From positions 124,001 to 188,000 of the IMG/VR virus record IMGVR_UViG_3300010399_000031: a stretch of DNA of 64,000 nt; one strand, 5' to 3'. The notes beneath the pieces were generated by a model. That model was not told where the DNA came from, ran no database searches, and was given only the letters and a program-made list of their open reading frames with translations. A program made the position numbers and the translations under genes. Shown in pieces: positions 2,475-33,839 of this stretch. The first letter of the stretch is position 1; every line of letters begins with the position of its first letter.

Positions 2475-3167
2475 ATGAGTCAACTGGGTCAATTTGAACC
2501 GCCTGAGTTCGTTCCGATGCAAGAATCAGGTCCCAATCCGTTCACCCCAACCAGTGGTAATACGGGTGGGACTTGGGTGCCCGAGGAACAACAAACGGCA
2601 ACATGGCGTATCTTTAACAAACTCTATAAGTGTCGTATTTCAGTTTTCCAGACACGCTCGCTCGATGACATTCAGTTTTTTGGAGTGTCTATTTCAGGCG
2701 ATCGAGAGTTTGATGCAACCATGCGAAGTGAAAACCGCCTGTATTACAAGACGGTGGCCCAGATGCTCATGTACTTCAAAAACGACGTAACGGTTGGTTT
2801 GTTCGATGTGCGTGATTCAAAGTTGATCTACGATGACTGTCGTGACCATATGGCTACATGGCAGCGGGTGCTTTTAAAGTCTCCGAACATTAAACCCTCG
2901 CAGGGTACGCTCGACCAACTTCAGCTACTGGATAAATTTGCAGCGACGGTTTATCCACATGCTGCACCGCTTTATACCCAAGAGTTCACTGAATCGGTTC
3001 TTTTGCGGCGCTTCAATGCGGTGGGTTTTGGTAATCTTGGGTTACCTTCGGCGGCGTCTATCCCTGAGGCACCTGAACCGGTGGTTGAGCAAGCCTATTC
3101 ACCACCGTCGCACGATTCGTTTGCAGACGTGTTTGCAAAAAAGCGCAATAATTGGCGGGGAGAATAA
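2475..3167 (+). CDS. conserved jumbo-phage protein in virion block
   Basis: ATG at 2475 after GGAG; stop abuts next gene. Confidence 0.55.
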   Translation: MSQLGQFEPPEFVPMQESGPNPFTPTSGNTGGTWVPEEQQTATWRIFNKLYKCRISVFQTRSLDDIQFFGVSISGDREFDATMRSENRLYYKTVAQMLMYFKNDVTVGLFDVRDSKLIYDDCRDHMATWQRVLLKSPNIKPSQGTLDQLQLLDKFAATVYPHAAPLYTQEFTESVLLRRFNAVGFGNLGLPSAASIPEAPEPVVEQAYSPPSHDSFADVFAKKRNNWRGE

Positions 3168-4562
3168 ATGGACATCCAAGATTCCGCACTGTATCGCGAG
3201 ATCAACGCTATCCTCAGTAGCGGGGTTAAGCCCGTACACTTCGCATGGGCGGCAACAGTGCACGCGAATGGGAAGAACATTCGGGCGATGAAGTTAAGAG
3301 AGATGGACATTCAGCGCGACTATGAAGTTAACTATTCGGATGACATCCATGTTCTATTGGTATTTCCAGCGGGGGATTTCTGGGCCGATATTTACCCGTA
3401 CCATGATAACCTGGAGGTGACGATCTATAAGTACCCTTTATCCGAGGTTGGAGATGCCGCTGATAATAGTTCACCGGTGCAAACTGAACGCTACAAAGCG
3501 ATCTTAAGTATCGGTGATAATGGTTCTCCTTTGTTGGAGAACACGGGCGCCAATAATGATACGCGCGATACGCTCAATTTGAAAGACTTCGTACCAGTGG
3601 AGTTTCAGCTGATTGATCGCTCTCTTTACCAGATGCGGATGATGGAAGTCGGTAATAACTTTCGCAACTGTACAGTCGAGCAAGCACTAAGAGCGATTAT
3701 GACCAGTGAGTCTCAGAAGGTCATCGTCGATCAACAGCGAGTCAATCAAGGGGTGGAGATGGTACCGGCTAATAACCAAACCGTCCGTTCCACTGTCAGT
3801 ATTCCGCAAGGTACAGCTCTGACCGATGTTCCCGCTTGGATTCATCAAAAGTGCGGGGGAGTTTATAGTGCAGGCTTTGGGTACTACCTTCAAAACAATC
3901 ATTGGTATATCTATCCGTGTTATGATCCTACGCGAGTCAATAAAACCGCACCGGCTCTCACGATCATCAATCTACCAAAAAACCGCTTTGTTGGAATAGA
4001 ACGCACTTATCGACTTGATGGAAGTAATTTGGTGGTCCTTGCCACAGGAGACGTTAAATTTCGCGATCGCTCCAATGCCATGCAGTTAAACCGTGGTAAC
4101 GGGGTGCGCTTTGTGGCGGCCGACGAGTTGATTGACAGCTGGGTGACGGTTAAAAACGGCATTCCCATTGCCTCTCGTGGTAAGGTGACAACGGAGGTGA
4201 TGACCACTGCGCGCCCTGACGGAATTAATAATGCACGTGTCAGCCCCCGTGCGATCAATGCTAATCCGTTTGTGGAATATTCGGATATGGCAGCCAGAAA
4301 TGGTTCGCCGTTTGCACTCACCTGGGAGAACTCAGACCCCAGTTTAATTACGCCAGGTATGCTGGCGGTGGTAGTGTATCAGGACGGTGAATCTATCTCG
4401 CAAGTGTATGGCGTAGTGTTAAAGTCCCATACTTTTGTACGAATGCAAGGCAGCGGGATGACTAGTTCTCGACACGCAACTGATACCGCCATCTCGATTT
4501 TTGTGCAACGACCCTTGGGTAACGGTGATAATACCGGCCAAGGAGTGATCACTCTATCGTGA
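3168..4562 (+). CDS. virion structural protein, possibly baseplate hub-like
   Basis: 464 aa, GGAG RBS, beta-rich; hub call is inference only. Confidence 0.5.
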   Translation: MDIQDSALYREINAILSSGVKPVHFAWAATVHANGKNIRAMKLREMDIQRDYEVNYSDDIHVLLVFPAGDFWADIYPYHDNLEVTIYKYPLSEVGDAADNSSPVQTERYKAILSIGDNGSPLLENTGANNDTRDTLNLKDFVPVEFQLIDRSLYQMRMMEVGNNFRNCTVEQALRAIMTSESQKVIVDQQRVNQGVEMVPANNQTVRSTVSIPQGTALTDVPAWIHQKCGGVYSAGFGYYLQNNHWYIYPCYDPTRVNKTAPALTIINLPKNRFVGIERTYRLDGSNLVVLATGDVKFRDRSNAMQLNRGNGVRFVAADELIDSWVTVKNGIPIASRGKVTTEVMTTARPDGINNARVSPRAINANPFVEYSDMAARNGSPFALTWENSDPSLITPGMLAVVVYQDGESISQVYGVVLKSHTFVRMQGSGMTSSRHATDTAISIFVQRPLGNGDNTGQGVITLS

Positions 4563-27181: not shown

Positions 27182-27206
27182 ATACACGGTGTGTTTGTTG
27201 CCAAAA

Positions 27207-27234
27207 GGGAGTGGTTACAGCCACTCCCTTTTTA
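27207..27234 (+). terminator. rho-independent terminator
   Basis: GGGAGTGG...CCACTCCC + T6. Confidence 0.75.
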
Positions 27235-28897: not shown

Positions 28898-28952
28898 GAA
28901 AGATTGCGACGGAAGATAAAATTCTTCCGCCACTTTTAATGCGAGGTTTTCC

Positions 28953-29835: not shown

Positions 29836-30096
29836 GTGGATATTGAAGAGCAACTAAAGAAATGGGAAGAAGGGCAGTCGCTCCACAACGAAGAACGCGG
29901 TGAATGTTGTCCTGACTTCTCCTGTTGTCAGCCGAACTTGCTCGCCCCTTCACACGAGAGGCAAGCTTTCGCTAAAGCTTATCGAGAAGAAGGTTCAGAT
30001 TCGCCGATTGTGCAATCGATGTTGATGGGTTTTCTGACCAGGATGATCGGCAATCAAACGTACGTTGCTGGAAATACATCCGATACGATCAATTAA
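29836..30096 (+). CDS. small Cys-containing hypothetical protein
   Basis: AAGGAG RBS, GTG start, CCPDFSCC. Confidence 0.6.
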   Translation: MDIEEQLKKWEEGQSLHNEERGECCPDFSCCQPNLLAPSHERQAFAKAYREEGSDSPIVQSMLMGFLTRMIGNQTYVAGNTSDTIN

Positions 30097-30106
30097 GAGA
30101 GGGCGA

Positions 30107-30343
30107 ATGAATACTGAAGACTTATCTTACGCGCTCGTTCAACGCTTGCGGTTAATTGACATCGTTTTAGAACACTCCAATGTGTTTAACCGCAAGATTC
30201 TGATGGATTATTTCGGTATCTCGATGCCTCAGGCGAGTACCGATTTGGCCAATTACATCAAACTCACGCCGGGTAACCTCATCTACGATAAGAGCAATAA
30301 AACCTATCGGCGTGCACCCACCTTTCAGCGAGTTTGGAAATGA
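30107..30343 (+). CDS. stand-alone CapW/BrxR-like winged-HTH (no WYL domain)
   Basis: QRLRLID...NRKILMDYFGISMPQASTDLANY...PGNLIYDKSNKTY matches N-terminus of WYL repressors. Confidence 0.7.
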   Translation: MNTEDLSYALVQRLRLIDIVLEHSNVFNRKILMDYFGISMPQASTDLANYIKLTPGNLIYDKSNKTYRRAPTFQRVWK

Positions 30344-30591
30344 AATTCATCTTCAACGATCACAATCAGTCGATTTGCCGTGTCCAGTCGATCAAATTCC
30401 TCACTGCCGGGGAAGACTTTGCTGATCCCCGCATCCTGATCTCGGCCTTCGGTACGAGTGCTGGTCGCATGGATCCACTCAAAGCAGCGATGCAGTGCAA
30501 ATTGGCGTACAAACATGTGCATCGTGCACCGATCGAAGCAATCACCCAGCAGATGTTTGCTGACCACCAAGCCATTGCGCAATGGGTTTAA
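30340..30591 (+). CDS. hypothetical protein
   Basis: ATGA overlap with upstream gene. Confidence 0.6.
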   Translation: MKFIFNDHNQSICRVQSIKFLTAGEDFADPRILISAFGTSAGRMDPLKAAMQCKLAYKHVHRAPIEAITQQMFADHQAIAQWV

Positions 30592-30600
30592 GGAGTATAA

Positions 30601-31152
30601 ATGGGTACGGATATGTGGTGTGTCGTCGGTCGGGTAAAACCGAATACCGGCGATAAGGAGCAGGGTACTGAACTCGCGGTGTTCGGCGACAAGAGAGTGT
30701 TGTTCGAGGATCTGGAGTTCTACTCCGGGAAGGAAACCAATCTGTCCCGCAACTACAAACTGTACTATTTCCTCGGGGACAATGATCATTGGTTAAACCC
30801 TGATAATCCTTCTCTATCCATCCTTCCCAATTTGACTGAGCGACAAATTGCAACCGAAGCGTTTATTGCTTGGGTCAATGGGGGGTACGAGAAGTCATCG
30901 ATCCAGTTCAAGAACGAATACGGCAACTACGGTCCGTTCATAGGTAACGATGTTGACGAATGTCTTCACTTCATCGGGGATCGTTGCCATACGTTGCATC
31001 GGGTCGAAGACCTAAGGAAATTTGATTACGATCAGCAAGAACCCATTGAAGGTAAAACGTATCGCGAACTCTTCCCGTCGTGGTGGTTCCAGTTTCTCGA
31101 TTGGTGTAAAGAACAGAAATGGGAGTTTGCGATCTTCGGATTTTCGTTCTAA
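30601..31152 (+). CDS. hypothetical protein
   Basis: AAGGAG RBS, 183 aa. Confidence 0.7.
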   Translation: MGTDMWCVVGRVKPNTGDKEQGTELAVFGDKRVLFEDLEFYSGKETNLSRNYKLYYFLGDNDHWLNPDNPSLSILPNLTERQIATEAFIAWVNGGYEKSSIQFKNEYGNYGPFIGNDVDECLHFIGDRCHTLHRVEDLRKFDYDQQEPIEGKTYRELFPSWWFQFLDWCKEQKWEFAIFGFSF

Positions 31153-31174: not shown

Positions 31175-31570
31175 ATGCCTGCAAAGATCAAGATCGAAAC
31201 GCAAGATGCGGCACTCAGTGCCGCACTTCAGGTTGTCATCGCAGAAGCCATTCAGAGCGCTGGCTTCACCAATACCAAAGTCAAGATCGTCATGGTCTCT
31301 AATGGTGTGGAAGTTCCGGGGCAATTTGCTCGGGTCGCTGACATCAATATTCAAGCAGGCCATGAGCGGGCTTCACCGCGCCGCGAACCACCTGTCTTGG
31401 AAGATTTGCGGTTCGTTGTTCCGCATCCAGAAGGTGGTGCTAAGGAATTCATCAAACCCATGATCGAGAAAAATCCCGATCTCATGGATCGACCGATCGT
31501 ACTGGACGGCTATGCCGATGTTAGCGAAAAGTACGCGGAACAAGAAGTCGCTTTTCTTTACGGGAAATAA
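31175..31570 (+). CDS. hypothetical protein
   Basis: AGGAG RBS, 131 aa. Confidence 0.7.
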   Translation: MPAKIKIETQDAALSAALQVVIAEAIQSAGFTNTKVKIVMVSNGVEVPGQFARVADINIQAGHERASPRREPPVLEDLRFVVPHPEGGAKEFIKPMIEKNPDLMDRPIVLDGYADVSEKYAEQEVAFLYGK

Positions 31571-31579
31571 AGGAACATC

Positions 31580-32329
31580 ATGTCCGAACAAAACTATCTG
31601 AACACGATGCGCGATGTACTGGATAACGGTACATGGCAGAAGAACGACCGCACGGGCGAAATGTGTTGCATGCTCGACGGCGCGATGGCGCGCTTTGACA
31701 TCAGTCAAGCGTTCACGTGTGCGGTGACAACAAAGAAGCTCGCGTGGAAGTCGATCACCGGTGAGTTCTGTGGCTTTCTGCGCGGTGTAACGAGCGCTGC
31801 TGACTTCCGTGCGCTCGGTTCGAAGGTGTGGGACCAGAATGCTAACGAGAACGCCGCATGGCTCGCTAATACCTTCCGTAAAGGTCCTGATGATTTGGGC
31901 GATGTATACGGTGCGCAATGGCGTCGTTGGCCTGCATACAAACATCTCAAAATGGCTGAATTAAATACGACCGTTGCGATTCCGGGTGCTACAGCGCGTC
32001 TTGATGAAGCCTATCGTAATGGCTGGATGATTCTTACACAGCATAAAGTCAACCTTGCGTTTAAAGGTAAGACTGAAGACGGGTTGGATTTTGAGATCAA
32101 AGATGCAATGAATTTTGAACCCGGACAATATCTGGTTCTTACTAAGCAAATCGATCAACTCGGTGACTGCATTCGCAAGCTGATTCTCAATCCGTCTGAT
32201 CGACGAATTCTCTTCCACGGCTGGAACCCAGCCAAGCTCGACGAGATCGCGTTGCCAGCTTGCCACATTTTGTATCAGTTTCTGCCGAATCTTGCAACTC
32301 GTGAATTGAATCTCGCGATGTACATCCGT
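31580..32329 (+). CDS. thyA: thymidylate synthase, exon 1
   Basis: DRTG, VTTKKL, YGAQWR, RRI...WNP...ALPACH; breaks at MYIR. Confidence 0.93.
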
Positions 32330-33425
32330 TAAATCCATGAGCGGCTTCTGCGAGTAATCGCAGTCGAACAACTTCTCTAAAACGGGAAACCCTCATTCGT
32401 GAGACAATCCGTTGCTAACCTGTTACAAACTGCGATCGTCTAACCACTTGGTGTGGACGCCAAGGAAATTACGATGATTGGTGCGTATATCTTGACCCAT
32501 GTGAAATCGAAAATGTTTTATGTGGGTAGCTCGAAAGATGTTGATAAGCGCGTAAAGCTTCATTGGTATTTACTGATGAAGGGCAAACACATTTCAAAGA
32601 CTTTTCAAAAGCTTTGGGATGAATCGCCGAAATTTGATGTTCGGACCATTCGAGCAGAAAGTAGAGACGAAGCGTTTGCCGTTGAACAAGCTTTCATCAC
32701 GGAGAATGAAGATAATCCGAAGATGATAAACATCGGTCGTGGTGTTTATGGGGGCGATAACTTGACCCGCCATCCAGAACGTGCTGCGATTATTGAGAAA
32801 ATAACTTCGTCATGGAGAACACTCATTCGTGAGATGTCTCCGGAAGAACGAAAGATGCGATTTGGACGCGCAGGGGAATTGAATCCCATGTACGGTAAGA
32901 CGCATTCTGACGAAGTTAAAGCCATGCTTTCCGCTATCAATAAGGGAAATCGGTACGCACTTGGCGCAGTAAGAAGTATTGAACAAAGGAAAGCTATTTC
33001 AGATTTCGCAAAAACGAGAACTGGAAAAGCAAATTCGTTTTACGGTCGAACACATTCGGAAGAAACAAAGAGAAAGTTATCTGAGCAATTGAAAGGACGA
33101 CTTCCTCCTACTATCCGGGCTGTATCGATCAATGGTGTTACTTATCCGTCGGTTACAGAAGCTTCGCGAACTATCGGCGTTGTTCCTGCAACCATTCTTT
33201 TTCGGATAAAAAGTAACAATCCTAAGTTCAAAGATTACTTCTACGTAACAGCAATGCCCAACGACTAGCCGAAAGGCGTAGGGTTCAAGCGAACTCGAAA
33301 CGGGAAGGGCCTCAGAAATGAGGTCGTGATATAGTCTGATCTGCATGGCGACATGCAGCGGCTGACAGGTGCCTAAGACTGTCAGCGGGTTACGTCTAGC
33401 GAACGTAACTGAACGCCCCCACATG
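32330..33425 (+). mobile_element. group I intron (IA-like) in thyA
   Basis: exon ends in U and intron ends in G; P1 CCGU/GCGG with U.G; P10 CCATGA/TCATGG; P7 GACTA/TAGTC (CAACGACTAG...GATATAGTC); splicing restores MYIR-SWDTFLGGPFN. Confidence 0.92.
32474..33268 (+). CDS. intron-encoded GIY-YIG homing endonuclease
   Basis: GAY...FYVGSS...R...H; NUMOD3 repeats (MYGKTHSDEVK, FYGRTHSEETK); C-terminal INGVTYPSVTEASR. Confidence 0.9.
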   Translation: MIGAYILTHVKSKMFYVGSSKDVDKRVKLHWYLLMKGKHISKTFQKLWDESPKFDVRTIRAESRDEAFAVEQAFITENEDNPKMINIGRGVYGGDNLTRHPERAAIIEKITSSWRTLIREMSPEERKMRFGRAGELNPMYGKTHSDEVKAMLSAINKGNRYALGAVRSIEQRKAISDFAKTRTGKANSFYGRTHSEETKRKLSEQLKGRLPPTIRAVSINGVTYPSVTEASRTIGVVPATILFRIKSNNPKFKDYFYVTAMPND

Positions 33426-33839
33426 TCATGGGATACTTTTTTAGGTGGCCCCTTCAACATCGCGGAAGGTGGTTTACTGCTCGAACTGGTCTCGCGACTG
33501 ACAGGCTTTAAGCCCAAGCGAGTGACGATCTTCTCGGGCGATACCCACGTGTACGAAAATCATCTACCCATGGTCGAGGAACAGCTGAGTCGTACCCCGC
33601 TTGGTCCGCCTCAACTGGACATCAATGATCGTATTCCGTACTTCAACACTGCACTCACTCGCTTCAAAGACGAGCGCGGCGAAGAATTGCACGATCTCGA
33701 TCCGTTGGAATTTGACAAACGGGCGCGCGAACATGCAGTCTCGGTTGCAATTGATTGGCTCTCGATGGTCGAACCGACGGATTTCACGCTGGATGGATAT
33801 TTCCATCACCCCGAACTGAAGGCACCCATGGCTGTCTAA
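33426..33839 (+). CDS. thyA: thymidylate synthase, exon 2
   Basis: SWDTFLGGPFNIA, GDTHVYENH, C-terminal APMAV. Confidence 0.93.
   Translation, partial: SWDTFLGGPFNIAEGGLLLELVSRLTGFKPKRVTIFSGDTHVYENHLPMVEEQLSRTPLGPPQLDINDRIPYFNTALTRFKDERGEELHDLDPLEFDKRAREHAVSVAIDWLSMVEPTDFTLDGYFHHPELKAPMAV

What the first reader, a model, noticed from the sequence alone, without database searches (positions are those of the whole stretch)
30107..30343. Sensor-less CapW/BrxR-type repressor: candidate silencer of host defence operons
Seen: a 78-aa ORF closely resembling only the N-terminal wHTH of WYL repressors (RL..ID...NR..LMD.FGIS..QAS.DL..Y....P.N..YDKS.K.Y), ending where the WYL domain would start. Known: CapW and BrxR repress CBASS and BREX operons and are released when the WYL domain senses nucleic acid. 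Inference: a phage copy with no sensor could be a non-inducible repressor or a dominant-negative decoy, i.e. a transcription-level anti-defence mechanism.
Basis: partly seen in the sequence, partly recalled or inferred. Interest (0 to 1): 0.72.

Follow-up and report, generated by a model that had tools for sequence, protein, structure and literature searches.

The report
Phage stand-alone CapW-type DNA-binding domain
A soil jumbo phage carries a small, well-conserved gene that is only the DNA-binding head of the bacterial regulators that switch anti-phage defence operons on, and it belongs to a phage-only family that may keep those operons shut, although this has not been tested.

Summary
[quoted passage not shown] No linker, WYL or WCX sequence is found anywhere in the 243-kb phage genome.

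It is not a chance truncation.
- dN/dS is 0.08.
- It belongs to a family of about 60 clusters (50% identity) of stand-alone wHTH proteins, found in unrelated phages with no shared neighbour gene.
- The four residues shown by mutation to bind DNA in CapW are kept. The recognition helix is identical to that of full-length CapW-like regulators lying beside CBASS and other defence genes.
- The helix 1/helix 2 face is remodelled from charged to hydrophobic residues and is predicted to form a homodimer (ipSAE 0.78, best control 0.00).
- A motif (CGCGTATA) shared upstream of those capW-like genes is not enriched in the phage genome.

Best reading (0.4): a ligand-blind dimeric repressor that occupies CapW-type operators of host or rival mobile elements. 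Main rival (0.3): a regulator of the phage's own genes. The decoy version is disfavoured. No function has been tested, and four literature searches found no description of such a protein.

The parts
30095..30103 (+). Ribosome-binding site (AAGAGAGGG) of the wHTH gene, directly after the stop (30094-30096) of the preceding 86-aa ORF
   Evidence: Read from the sequence. No sigma-70-like promoter or terminator was found on the + strand between 28962 and 32000, so the gene lies inside a polycistronic unit.
30107..30343 (+). CDS of the 78-aa stand-alone CapW/BrxR-type winged-helix protein (stop included)
   Evidence: ORF list and sequence. PDB phmmer E 2.9e-11 to CapW. PF26109. AF2 pLDDT 96.1. Foldseek rmsd 0.8 A to 7tb6. 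dN/dS 0.078 against the orthologue in L022.
30128..30178 (+). Helix 1 (residues 8-24). It carries the clade-specific substitutions Y8, A9, R15, L/V/I20, no W at 23 and Y24 (the window protein itself has S at 24), and forms most of the predicted homodimer interface.
   Evidence: DSSP of the model. Interface residues 15-16, 19-20 and 22-28. Column comparison of 64 stand-alone rows with 81 full-length or fragment rows. Enrichment p 0.011 and 1e-4.
30191..30214 (+). Helix 2 (residues 29-36). It includes R29, the equivalent of CapW Arg32, and interface residues 30-31 and 34-35.
   Evidence: The R32A mutation abolishes DNA binding in Sm CapW (PMC9122588). The residue equivalence comes from the alignment (offset +3).
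30224..30265 (+). Helix 3, the recognition helix (residues 40-53). The reading head I38-Y50 reads ISMPQASTDLANY, and S39, Q42 and S44 equal CapW Ser42, Gln45 and Ser47.
   Evidence: The SQS-AAA triple mutant abolishes DNA binding (PMC9122588). The head matches L012 CapW-like over ISMPQASTDL and L013 over ISMPQASTD.
30278..30313 (+). Beta-hairpin wing (residues 58-69) with conserved Y60, D61, K65 and Y67
   Evidence: These residues are conserved in both the stand-alone and the full-length proteins.

Best explanation
The gene encodes a ligand-blind, self-dimerising copy of the DNA-reading head of CapW-type defence regulators. Shown: the fold, the retained DNA-contact residues, the absence of linker, WYL and WCX, purifying selection, and membership of a stand-alone family found in phage and phage-like contexts in every search made here. 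Inferred: two copies pair through a hydrophobic helix 1/helix 2 face that the stand-alone clade evolved in place of the linker, WYL and WCX scaffold. The dimer would then bind the imperfect palindromes that CapW-type regulators recognise over the -10 region of defence-operon promoters in the host or in rival mobile elements. Because it has no ssDNA-sensing WYL domain, DNA damage or infection cannot release it. It would therefore hold those promoters shut when the resident regulator lets go, blunting the induced rise in CBASS, BREX-type and other defences.
For: Homology and fold. The DNA-binding residues R32, S42, Q45 and S47 of Sm CapW (PMC9122588) correspond to R29, S39, Q42 and S44 here; R29 is kept in 97% and S39, Q42 and S44 in 62-86% of 64 stand-alone rows. 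The recognition helix is identical over 9-10 residues to full-length CapW-like proteins L012 and L013. The ten closest full-length relatives all carry WYL and lie beside CBASS type II (E1-E2/JAB, 4 loci), CBASS type III (HORMA/TRIP13/NucC, 3 loci), LmuA/DRT-like matches with NACHT, and BrxL. CGCGTATA occurs upstream of 9 of 17 such capW-like genes from two phyla. In the 243-kb phage genome it occurs once, inside a gene, against about 4 expected, and looser versions occur at chance level. No recurrent palindromic operator is present in the phage genome. No sensor remnant: tblastn of 29 full-length proteins finds only the wHTH gene. It is functional: dN/dS 0.078. Family: 70 of the 154 best representatives end with the wHTH. 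All 7 IMG/VR hits are short, whereas all 10 genome hits and 38 of 41 Burkholderiales hits are full-length. Atlas clusters containing only PF26109 are 65-83% viral. The gene moves alone, with no shared neighbour among unrelated phages. It is absent from Sonora's relatives, in a hypervariable region. Predicted homodimer: ipSAE 0.78, best of 3 controls 0.00. In the tool's calibration that mark was reached by 20 of 30 proteins solved as pairs and 1 of 23 solved as single chains, and the counts hold only roughly because my own alignment was used. The columns that differ most from full-length proteins concentrate in that interface and turn hydrophobic. CapW-dependent induction is known to matter for blocking lambda prophage induction (PMC11662680) and for primed immunity (10.1101/2025.11.13.688357).
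Against: Nothing has been measured: no DNA binding, no target and no phenotype. The host is unknown (soil and rhizosphere metagenomes). All the known dimerisation elements of the parent family are missing (crossover helix, linker, WYL and WCX; PMC9122601, PMC9122589), so dimerisation rests on one prediction, which may draw on memory of CapW structures. CGCGTATA is only a conserved upstream motif. It has not been shown to be the operator, and five of the nine loci that carry it are related Acidobacteria. Basal defence expression often suffices, and CapW-dependent induction was not needed for CBASS protection in the first study (PMC9122588), so the benefit to a lytic jumbo phage is uncertain. 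Within the jumbo-phage lineage the gene is syntenic and conserved, as a core regulator would be.
Confidence: 0.4

Rival explanations
1. It regulates the phage's own genes, as Aca or Cro-type proteins do. The stand-alone wHTH would bind a site in the phage genome, for example the promoter of its own early or accessory operon, and tune phage transcription. Its homology to CapW/BrxR would then reflect only a shared DNA-binding domain.
For: Small HTH proteins that sit after variable small genes in unrelated phages are the hallmark of Aca-type autoregulators (my own knowledge). The same pattern is seen here, including an AcrVA2-like gene two genes away in L027. The gene is syntenic and conserved in the jumbo-phage lineage. 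In Sonora the nearest upstream intergenic gap has GATCCGTATACTT over a -10-like TATACT, one base off the CapW-type core. Reading heads vary among sub-clades, as expected if each phage has its own site.
Against: There is no promoter-like gap or AT-rich inverted repeat next to the gene in the window. The nearest upstream gaps hold GC-rich terminator-type hairpins. No repeated palindrome other than terminator hairpins occurs in the 243-kb genome. The CapW-type core motif is at or below chance in the phage genome and in Sonora. The recognition helix is identical to that of defence-linked CapW-like proteins.
Confidence: 0.3
2. It is a host-takeover or general DNA-binding protein unrelated to defence. 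It would bind other host promoters or DNA structures, for example to redirect host transcription, or act in phage DNA metabolism.
For: wHTH-WYL-WCX regulators also control DNA-damage responses (PafBC, DriD; PMC9122588, PMC11662680), so promoters with related operators are not limited to defence. The gene lies among nucleotide-metabolism genes (thyA downstream; thymidylate kinase upstream in relatives).
Against: The nearest full-length relatives are the repressor-type CapW proteins next to defence genes, not the activator type. R29, the equivalent of Arg32, is described as CapW-specific.
Confidence: 0.15
3. It is a dominant-negative decoy. The free wHTH would bind the host CapW/BrxR protein itself, taking the place of its wHTH against the WYL domain or linker, and so disturb its regulation.
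For: [quoted passage not shown]
Against: Residues that are strongly conserved and mostly charged in full-length proteins (E15, R20, W23, E/D24, D/E31) are replaced in the stand-alone clade by R, L, H/Q, Y and A/V/I. A decoy should keep them. Displacing the host wHTH would derepress the defence operon, which would harm the phage. The same face is predicted to self-pair.
Confidence: 0.05
4. It is an inert remnant of a capW/brxR gene captured and truncated by the phage.
For: Independent truncations do exist: a 101-aa BrxR-like remnant in a bacterial genome (L038 8118-8423) and L011, which has a full-length-type signature.
Against: dN/dS is 0.078. The protein always ends 0-3 residues after the wHTH across about 60 diverged clusters. 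A clade-specific signature is present in 60 of 78 stand-alone rows and 0 of 82 full-length or fragment rows. There is no downstream remnant.
Confidence: 0.02

Closest known systems
CapW (CBASS-associated wHTH-WYL-WCX repressor; S. maltophilia 7TB6, P. aeruginosa 7TB5, R. leguminosarum 9C5G)
   Same: Same wHTH fold (rmsd 0.7-0.8 A, 38-41% identity). Same DNA-contact residues, including the CapW-typical Arg32 equivalent. Recognition helix identical to some CapW-like proteins.
   Different: Lacks the linker helices, the ssDNA-binding WYL domain and the WCX dimerisation domain. Encoded inside a phage operon rather than divergently from a defence operon. The helix 1/helix 2 surface is replaced by hydrophobic residues.
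BrxR (BREX-associated regulator; E. fergusonii 7QFZ, Acinetobacter 7T8K/7T8L)
   Same: Same wHTH domain family, PF26109. Some members of the stand-alone clade (P0042) have BrxR-like reading heads and match 7QFZ best.
   Different: The window protein is nearer to CapW than to BrxR (E 3e-11 against 2e-6). It has no crossover helix, WYL or C-terminal dimerisation domain.
Stenotrophomonas phage Sonora CPT_Sonora_088 (QYW02189.1, annotated as a hypothetical protein)
   Same: A 75-aa member of the same stand-alone clade in a cultured phage (54% identity). About 46% identical to the wHTH of CapW from its host species (E 3.7e-13).
   Different: It sits in a different phage family (a 64-kb siphovirus, Mesyanzhinovviridae) with different neighbours, and it has not been characterised.
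Aca proteins (anti-CRISPR-associated HTH autoregulators)
   Same: Small stand-alone HTH proteins scattered among unrelated phages next to variable small genes. They work as ligand-independent repressors (my own knowledge).
   Different: Aca proteins bind inverted repeats in their own operon's promoter. No such site was found here. They have no sequence relation to CapW/BrxR.
PafBC / DriD (WYL-domain transcription activators of the DNA-damage response)
   Same: They share the wider wHTH-WYL-WCX architecture family.
   Different: They are activators that bind DNA only with ssDNA bound, and they are not the closest relatives. The phage protein lacks the domains that define them.

Membership tests
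CapW/BrxR family (wHTH-WYL-WCX repressors) | N-terminal winged helix of the WHD_BrxR type (PF26109) | tested here: met
   phmmer E 2.9e-11 to 7tb5. Precomputed PF26109. Foldseek top 15 matches are all CapW or BrxR, rmsd 0.8 A.
CapW/BrxR family (wHTH-WYL-WCX repressors) | DNA-contact residues of the wHTH (Sm CapW R32, S42, Q45, S47) | tested here: met
   R29, S39, Q42 and S44 by the alignment. The mutational evidence is in PMC9122588. Conservation is shown.
CapW/BrxR family (wHTH-WYL-WCX repressors) | Linker domain (two helices) that crosses over to give the domain-swapped dimer | tested here: not met
   The protein ends at residue 78, the last residue of the wHTH. There is no match to positions beyond 90 of 29 full-length proteins near the gene or elsewhere in the genome.
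CapW/BrxR family (wHTH-WYL-WCX repressors) | WYL domain that binds ssDNA (RWHVR motif) | tested here: not met
   No Pfam WYL hit on this ORF or the next ones. tblastn found no remnant.
CapW/BrxR family (wHTH-WYL-WCX repressors) | WCX / BrxR C-terminal dimerisation domain | tested here: not met
CapW/BrxR family (wHTH-WYL-WCX repressors) | Encoded next to, and usually divergently from, the defence operon it represses | tested here: not met
   The gene is inside a co-directional phage gene array, and PADLOC finds nothing in the neighbours. By contrast the full-length relatives lie beside CBASS, LmuA-like or BrxL genes.
CapW/BrxR family (wHTH-WYL-WCX repressors) | Homodimer that binds an imperfect palindrome over the promoter | tested here: inconclusive
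   A homodimer is predicted (ipSAE 0.78, best of 3 controls 0.00; in calibration the mark was reached by 20 of 30 pairs and 1 of 23 single chains). DNA binding cannot be tested with these tools.
Stand-alone WHD_BrxR proteins of phages (the clade defined here) | Protein ends 0-12 residues after the wHTH; length about 65-120 aa | tested here: met
   C-terminal tail of 0 residues. The same holds in Sonora and the IMG/VR loci.
Stand-alone WHD_BrxR proteins of phages (the clade defined here) | Signature states Y/F8, R/K15, hydrophobic 20, no W at 23, Y/F24, hydrophobic 31, R/K75 (at least 5 of 7) | tested here: met
   The window protein has 6 of the 7 states (Y8, R15, V20, H23, I31, R75; it has S at 24). 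Short-type in 53 of 70 short rows and 7 of 8 viral rows, and in 0 of 82 full-length or fragment rows. The positions were chosen from the same data.
Stand-alone WHD_BrxR proteins of phages (the clade defined here) | Groups with other stand-alone proteins, apart from full-length regulators, in a tree of the wHTH | tested here: inconclusive
   A clade free of full-length rows was recovered in all three trees, but support is uneven: SH-aLRT 87 and 93, but UFBoot 24 / SH-aLRT 30 in the careful search. Only 78 columns are available.
Stand-alone WHD_BrxR proteins of phages (the clade defined here) | Carried by phages | tested here: met
   The window is a virus record. All 7 IMG/VR hits are short. The contexts examined are arrays of small co-directional ORFs. 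Atlas clusters are 65-83% viral.
Anti-defence proteins | Lowers the activity or expression of a defence system and raises phage success on hosts that carry it | not testable with these tools
   Only circumstantial evidence: patchy distribution in hypervariable regions and occasional anti-restriction-type neighbours (AcrVA2-like; Mom-like and a weak Lar match).
Aca-type autoregulators | Inverted-repeat operator in the promoter of its own operon | tested here: not met
   No promoter-like gap with an AT-rich inverted repeat lies upstream. The gaps hold terminator-type hairpins. No recurrent palindrome occurs in the genome. A weak lead exists in Sonora only.

The most novel reading that the evidence does not exclude
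Phages carry a dedicated family of sensor-less 'super-repressors'. These would be the DNA-reading head of CapW/BrxR regulators, rebuilt to dimerise on its own, sitting on the operators of CBASS, BREX and other WYL-controlled defence operons so that infection or DNA damage cannot induce them. Reading heads within the one phage clade resemble both CapW-type and BrxR-type heads, as if they track the regulators of their hosts. This would be anti-defence by regulator mimicry at the level of transcription.
Probability: 0.3. Interest if true: 0.85.

Novelty: new variant of a known kind. Interest (0 to 1): 0.62.

Why it matters
WYL-domain repressors control many defence systems, and recent work shows that releasing them primes survivors against later phage attack and blocks prophage induction. 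No phage counter-measure aimed at this regulatory layer turned up in four searches of the held literature. A phage-restricted family that keeps the DNA-reading head but drops the sensor would be such a counter-measure. It would give a sequence-searchable marker for it, and a ready test pair exists: phage Sonora and S. maltophilia, whose CapW and operator are already characterised. If the protein instead regulates phage genes, it is still an example of phages re-using the DNA-binding module of a defence regulator with a newly evolved dimer interface.

Tried and rejected
- Local Pfam, PHROGs, NCBIfam and PADLOC scans of the ORF gave nothing. The local Pfam copy returns neither PF26109 nor PF26125, which other tools report for these proteins, so I took these blanks as library gaps rather than evidence.
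- Megablast of the region against GenBank phages found no match.
- The downstream 83-aa ORF is not a split-off WYL part. It has no WYL or WCX similarity and is absent from the relative L022.
- A conserved partner gene was rejected. All-against-all BLAST of neighbours in 10 loci shares only the wHTH gene. A family screen of 140 neighbouring ORFs shows no recurrent family.
- Recent capture from a host was rejected: the best full-length relatives are only 43-48% identical.
- Alignment A3 was too diverse for the search for related loci, so A1 was used instead.
- The CapW-type motif and looser palindromes were searched in the phage genome and in Sonora and occur at chance level.
- A de novo search for repeated palindromes found only terminator hairpins.
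- No RNA sequencing run was listed, so there is no expression evidence.
- BFVD gave one distant cultured-phage relative only, Pantoea phage LIET2, 23% identity.
- Four literature searches found no paper describing phage-encoded wHTH-only CapW/BrxR homologues.
- The geometry of the predicted dimer relative to DNA could not be inspected, because no coordinates are returned.

Full report
**What is there**

Window 30107-30343 (+) is a 78-aa ORF with a purine-rich ribosome-binding site. It starts 10 nt after the stop of the preceding 86-aa ORF, and its stop overlaps the ATG of the next ORF (ATGA). No sigma-70-like promoter or terminator lies next to it on its strand, so it sits inside a longer transcription unit.

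The window is bases 124001-188000 of a 243,403-bp IMG/VR virus record. It carries head-tail joining proteins, a Peptidase_S80-like match and Laminin_G_3-domain proteins whose nearest relatives are annotated baseplate or structural proteins. Its nearest cultured relative is distant: Burkholderia jumbo phage FLC9, 39% identity over one protein. The same DNA is held by soil and rhizosphere metagenome runs. The host is unknown.

**Check of the observation**

- The protein matches only the N-terminal ~80 residues of solved CapW and BrxR structures: 7tb5 E 2.9e-11, 7tb6 1.5e-10, 7qfz 1.7e-6, 7t8k 6e-4.
- The local Pfam, PHROGs, NCBIfam and PADLOC scans found nothing. The precomputed Pfam label is PF26109 WHD_BrxR, so I read the blanks as a library gap.
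- An AF2 model built on 57 homologues has pLDDT 96.1, with three helices (8-24, 29-36, 40-53) and a two-strand wing (58-61, 66-69).
- All 15 Foldseek PDB matches at E <= 1e-3 are CapW or BrxR chains. The best is S. maltophilia CapW: TMq 0.92, rmsd 0.8 A, 38% identity.

The one correction is that the protein ends at the end of the wHTH, where the ~65-residue linker starts, not where the WYL domain starts (domain limits from PMC11662680).

**It is not a broken gene**

- tblastn of 29 full-length relatives against the whole phage genome hits only this gene. Nothing matches their linker, WYL or WCX parts.
- Against the orthologue in a 229.5-kb relative (L022), dN/dS is 0.078.
- In that relative the gene lies directly upstream of an intact thyA. 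The three small ORFs that follow it in the window are therefore dispensable neighbours, not partners.

**A family, not a single case**

An exhaustive profile search found 1348 proteins at E <= 1e-3. The best ~35 are nearly all short proteins whose match ends at their C-terminus. Of the 154 proteins in hand:
- 70 end within 12 residues of the wHTH.
- 30 are full-length (260 aa or more).
- 54 are intermediate, probably cut at contig ends.

Other searches agree:
- A scan of IMG/VR gave seven relatives in contigs of 42-239 kb. Six stop 1-10 residues after the F-[KQ]-R-x-[WY] motif that closes the wHTH. The seventh (L011) carries a ~40-aa tail and has the full-length-type signature.
- The cultured Stenotrophomonas phage Sonora has a 75-aa member.
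- A pattern scan of 185,579 species genomes gave ten hits, all ~290-aa WYL proteins.
- A profile search of 301 genomes of one order gave 41 matches, 38 of them in full-length frames. Two exceptions lie at contig ends and one is a truncated remnant that still keeps the start of the linker.
- ESM Atlas clusters made only of PF26109 are 65-83% viral, with one at 52% bacterial.
- The contexts I looked at are arrays of small co-directional ORFs.
- Unrelated phages share no neighbouring gene.
- Sonora's relatives lack the gene, and the region around it is hypervariable.

**One clade?**

Trees of the 78-column domain always recover a group of 64-67 stand-alone proteins with no full-length protein inside. 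Support is uneven:
- SH-aLRT 87 in the first quick tree.
- SH-aLRT 93 after adding 21 BrxR-type domains from Burkholderiales.
- Only UFBoot 24 / SH-aLRT 30 in the careful search.

Independent support comes from a seven-position signature: Y8, R15, hydrophobic 20, no W at 23, Y24, hydrophobic 31, R75. It is present in 60 of 78 stand-alone rows and in 0 of 82 full-length or fragment rows. The positions were picked from the same data, so this describes the split rather than testing it.

**What was kept and what was changed**

Kept:
- The four residues whose mutation abolishes DNA binding in S. maltophilia CapW are R32, S42, Q45 and S47 (PMC9122588). They align to R29, S39, Q42 and S44 here.
- Along with D46, Y50, K65 and Y67, these positions are conserved in both groups. 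R29, D46 and Y50 are near-invariant, while S39, Q42 and S44 vary in some stand-alone sub-clades (62-86%).
- Arg32 is described as typical of CapW rather than BrxR.

Changed:
- The columns that differ most are 8, 9, 15, 20, 23, 24, 31 and 75.
- Full-length proteins have E15, R20, W23, E/D24 and D/E31. The stand-alone proteins have R, L, H/Q, Y and A/V/I.
- A complex prediction for two copies gave ipSAE 0.78 in all three runs, against 0.00 for the best of three controls. In the tool's calibration that mark was reached by 20 of 30 proteins solved as pairs and 1 of 23 solved as single chains. Those counts hold only roughly, because my own alignment was used.
- The predicted interface is residues 15-16, 19-20, 22-28, 30-31, 34-35, 66 and 78.
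- Five of the eight most divergent columns fall in that interface (hypergeometric p 0.011; rank test p 1e-4).

In the parent family, dimerisation comes from the crossover helix, the linker, the WYL domain and the C-terminal domain. In one BrxR structure the two wHTH domains are about 25 A apart (PMC9122601; PMC9122589). The simplest reading is that the stand-alone clade replaced the lost scaffold with a hydrophobic self-pairing face. That is inference from a prediction, and the prediction could lean on memory of the solved dimers.

**What might it bind?**

- The window's reading head (ISMPQASTDLANY) is identical over ten residues to that of a full-length CapW-like protein in L012 and over nine to L013.
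- All ten closest full-length relatives carry a WYL domain. They lie beside CBASS type II genes (E1-E2 and JAB, four loci), CBASS type III genes (HORMA, TRIP13, NucC, three loci), LmuA/DRT-like matches with NACHT proteins, or BrxL.
- The 8-mer CGCGTATA, usually as ATCGCGTATA and often inside a longer imperfect palindrome, occurs in 9 of 17 regions upstream of such capW-like genes from Acidobacteriota and Burkholiales-order genomes. About 0.1 would be expected by chance.
- This fits the published finding that CapW sites are imperfect palindromes over the -10 element. It has not been shown to be the operator, and five of the nine loci are related.
- The phage genome has one copy of the 8-mer, inside a gene, against about four expected. 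Looser versions occur at chance level.
- The only recurrent inverted repeats in the phage genome are GC-rich terminator-type hairpins.

If the shared reading head means shared specificity, the target is not on the phage genome.

**Mechanism proposed and its rivals**

Best reading (0.4): a ligand-blind dimer occupies CapW-type operators of the host or of rival mobile elements. It cannot be released by ssDNA, the signal that releases CapW (PMC11662680). That release is known to matter for blocking lambda prophage induction and for priming survivors of a failed infection (10.1101/2025.11.13.688357).

Against it:
- Nothing has been measured.
- Basal expression sufficed for CBASS protection in the first CapW study.
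- The gene is stably syntenic in the jumbo-phage lineage.

Rivals:
- Regulator of the phage's own operon, Aca or Cro-like (0.3). The scattered distribution next to variable small genes fits. So do an AcrVA2-like gene near one member and a near-match to the core motif over a -10-like element upstream of Sonora's operon. No operator-like site is seen in the window.
- Another host-directed DNA-binding role (0.15).
- Protein decoy (0.05). This is disfavoured because the face that would have to mimic the host wHTH is the one that changed.
- Inert remnant (0.02). This is contradicted by the conservation.

**Reading heads within the clade**

Some stand-alone members have heads of the form ..ATATRDF..Y. 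They match BrxR 7QFZ better than CapW, yet they stay inside the stand-alone clade when BrxR-type full-length domains with A[AG]ATRD heads are added. This could mean that heads within the phage clade track different host regulators. It could also mean only that few residue choices are open in this helix. I could not tell these apart.

**Novelty**

The domain family is catalogued, and automatic names already call such proteins 'BrxR/CapW wHTH domain-containing'. Four full-text searches found no paper that describes phage-encoded wHTH-only homologues or a phage counter-measure aimed at WYL regulators. I rate it a new variant of a known kind. The anti-defence function is a hypothesis with a ready test system: Sonora gp088 is about 46% identical to the wHTH of CapW from its host species.

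Noticed in passing
window 31580-33839: Thymidylate synthase is split into 31580-32332 and 33369-33839 by an insert that carries a GIY-YIG/NUMOD3/I-TevI-type homing endonuclease ORF (32453-33268). Relatives (L022 and the P0002 contig) have an intact 365-366-aa ThyA. This is probably a group I intron like that of T4 td, but the Rfam gathering-threshold scan found none.
   Followed up: partly
whole genome G000 (window = genome minus 124000), e.g. genome 158797 and 176909 (window 34797 and 52909): The repeated motifs GACGGCATAAA and AAGGGCATAAA occur five times each, and GGCATAAAGCC six times. Repeated hairpins GGGAGAGCC-N4-GGCTCTCCC also occur. These are candidate phage promoter and terminator signals.
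   Followed up: no
window 30340-30591, 30601-31152, 31175-31570: Three small ORFs lie between the wHTH gene and thyA. They are absent from relative L022, where the wHTH gene abuts thyA, and in the P0002 contig the first is replaced by a 203-aa gene. They have no family assignment apart from a weak PHROG 2613 match for the first. This is a local hot spot of gene turnover.
   Followed up: partly
L027 2163-3131: An AcrVA2-like gene (PF26125) lies two genes downstream of a stand-alone wHTH in a metagenomic phage-like contig. A Mom-like protein, a weak Lar match, NinX, a DGR reverse transcriptase with Avd, and an integrase each occur once near other members.
   Followed up: partly
P0037: A 3058-aa protein has 14 separate partial matches to positions 12-47 of the wHTH profile. 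It is an odd giant repeat protein.
   Followed up: no
L038 8118-8423 (G106:C2): A 101-aa BrxR-like remnant in a bacterial genome keeps the start of the linker. It lies next to a Bro-N-like gene on the other strand. This is an independent truncation and not a member of the phage clade.
   Followed up: partly
L011 1166-1495: An IMG/VR contig has a wHTH followed by a ~40-aa tail. It carries the full-length-type signature and falls outside the stand-alone clade, so it may be a second, separate origin of a short form.
   Followed up: no
L012-L013, genes at 2683-3930(-)/388-2667(-) and 2670-3860(-)/394-2670(-): The two CapW-like regulators with the same recognition helix as the phage protein are each divergently paired with a ~400-aa and ~760-aa gene pair. 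The ~400-aa proteins are 55% identical to each other, and the L012 one has weak LmuA and DRT-type matches. DUF6602 and NACHT matches also occur among these ten loci but were not assigned to particular genes. This may be a poorly described defence system.
   Followed up: no
window 27203-27232 and 28908-28931: GC-rich hairpins followed by T-runs lie in the two intergenic gaps upstream of the wHTH-containing gene block. The second is conserved in position in L022 and is followed in both by ATGCGAGGTTT. These are likely terminators that bound transcription units.
   Followed up: partly
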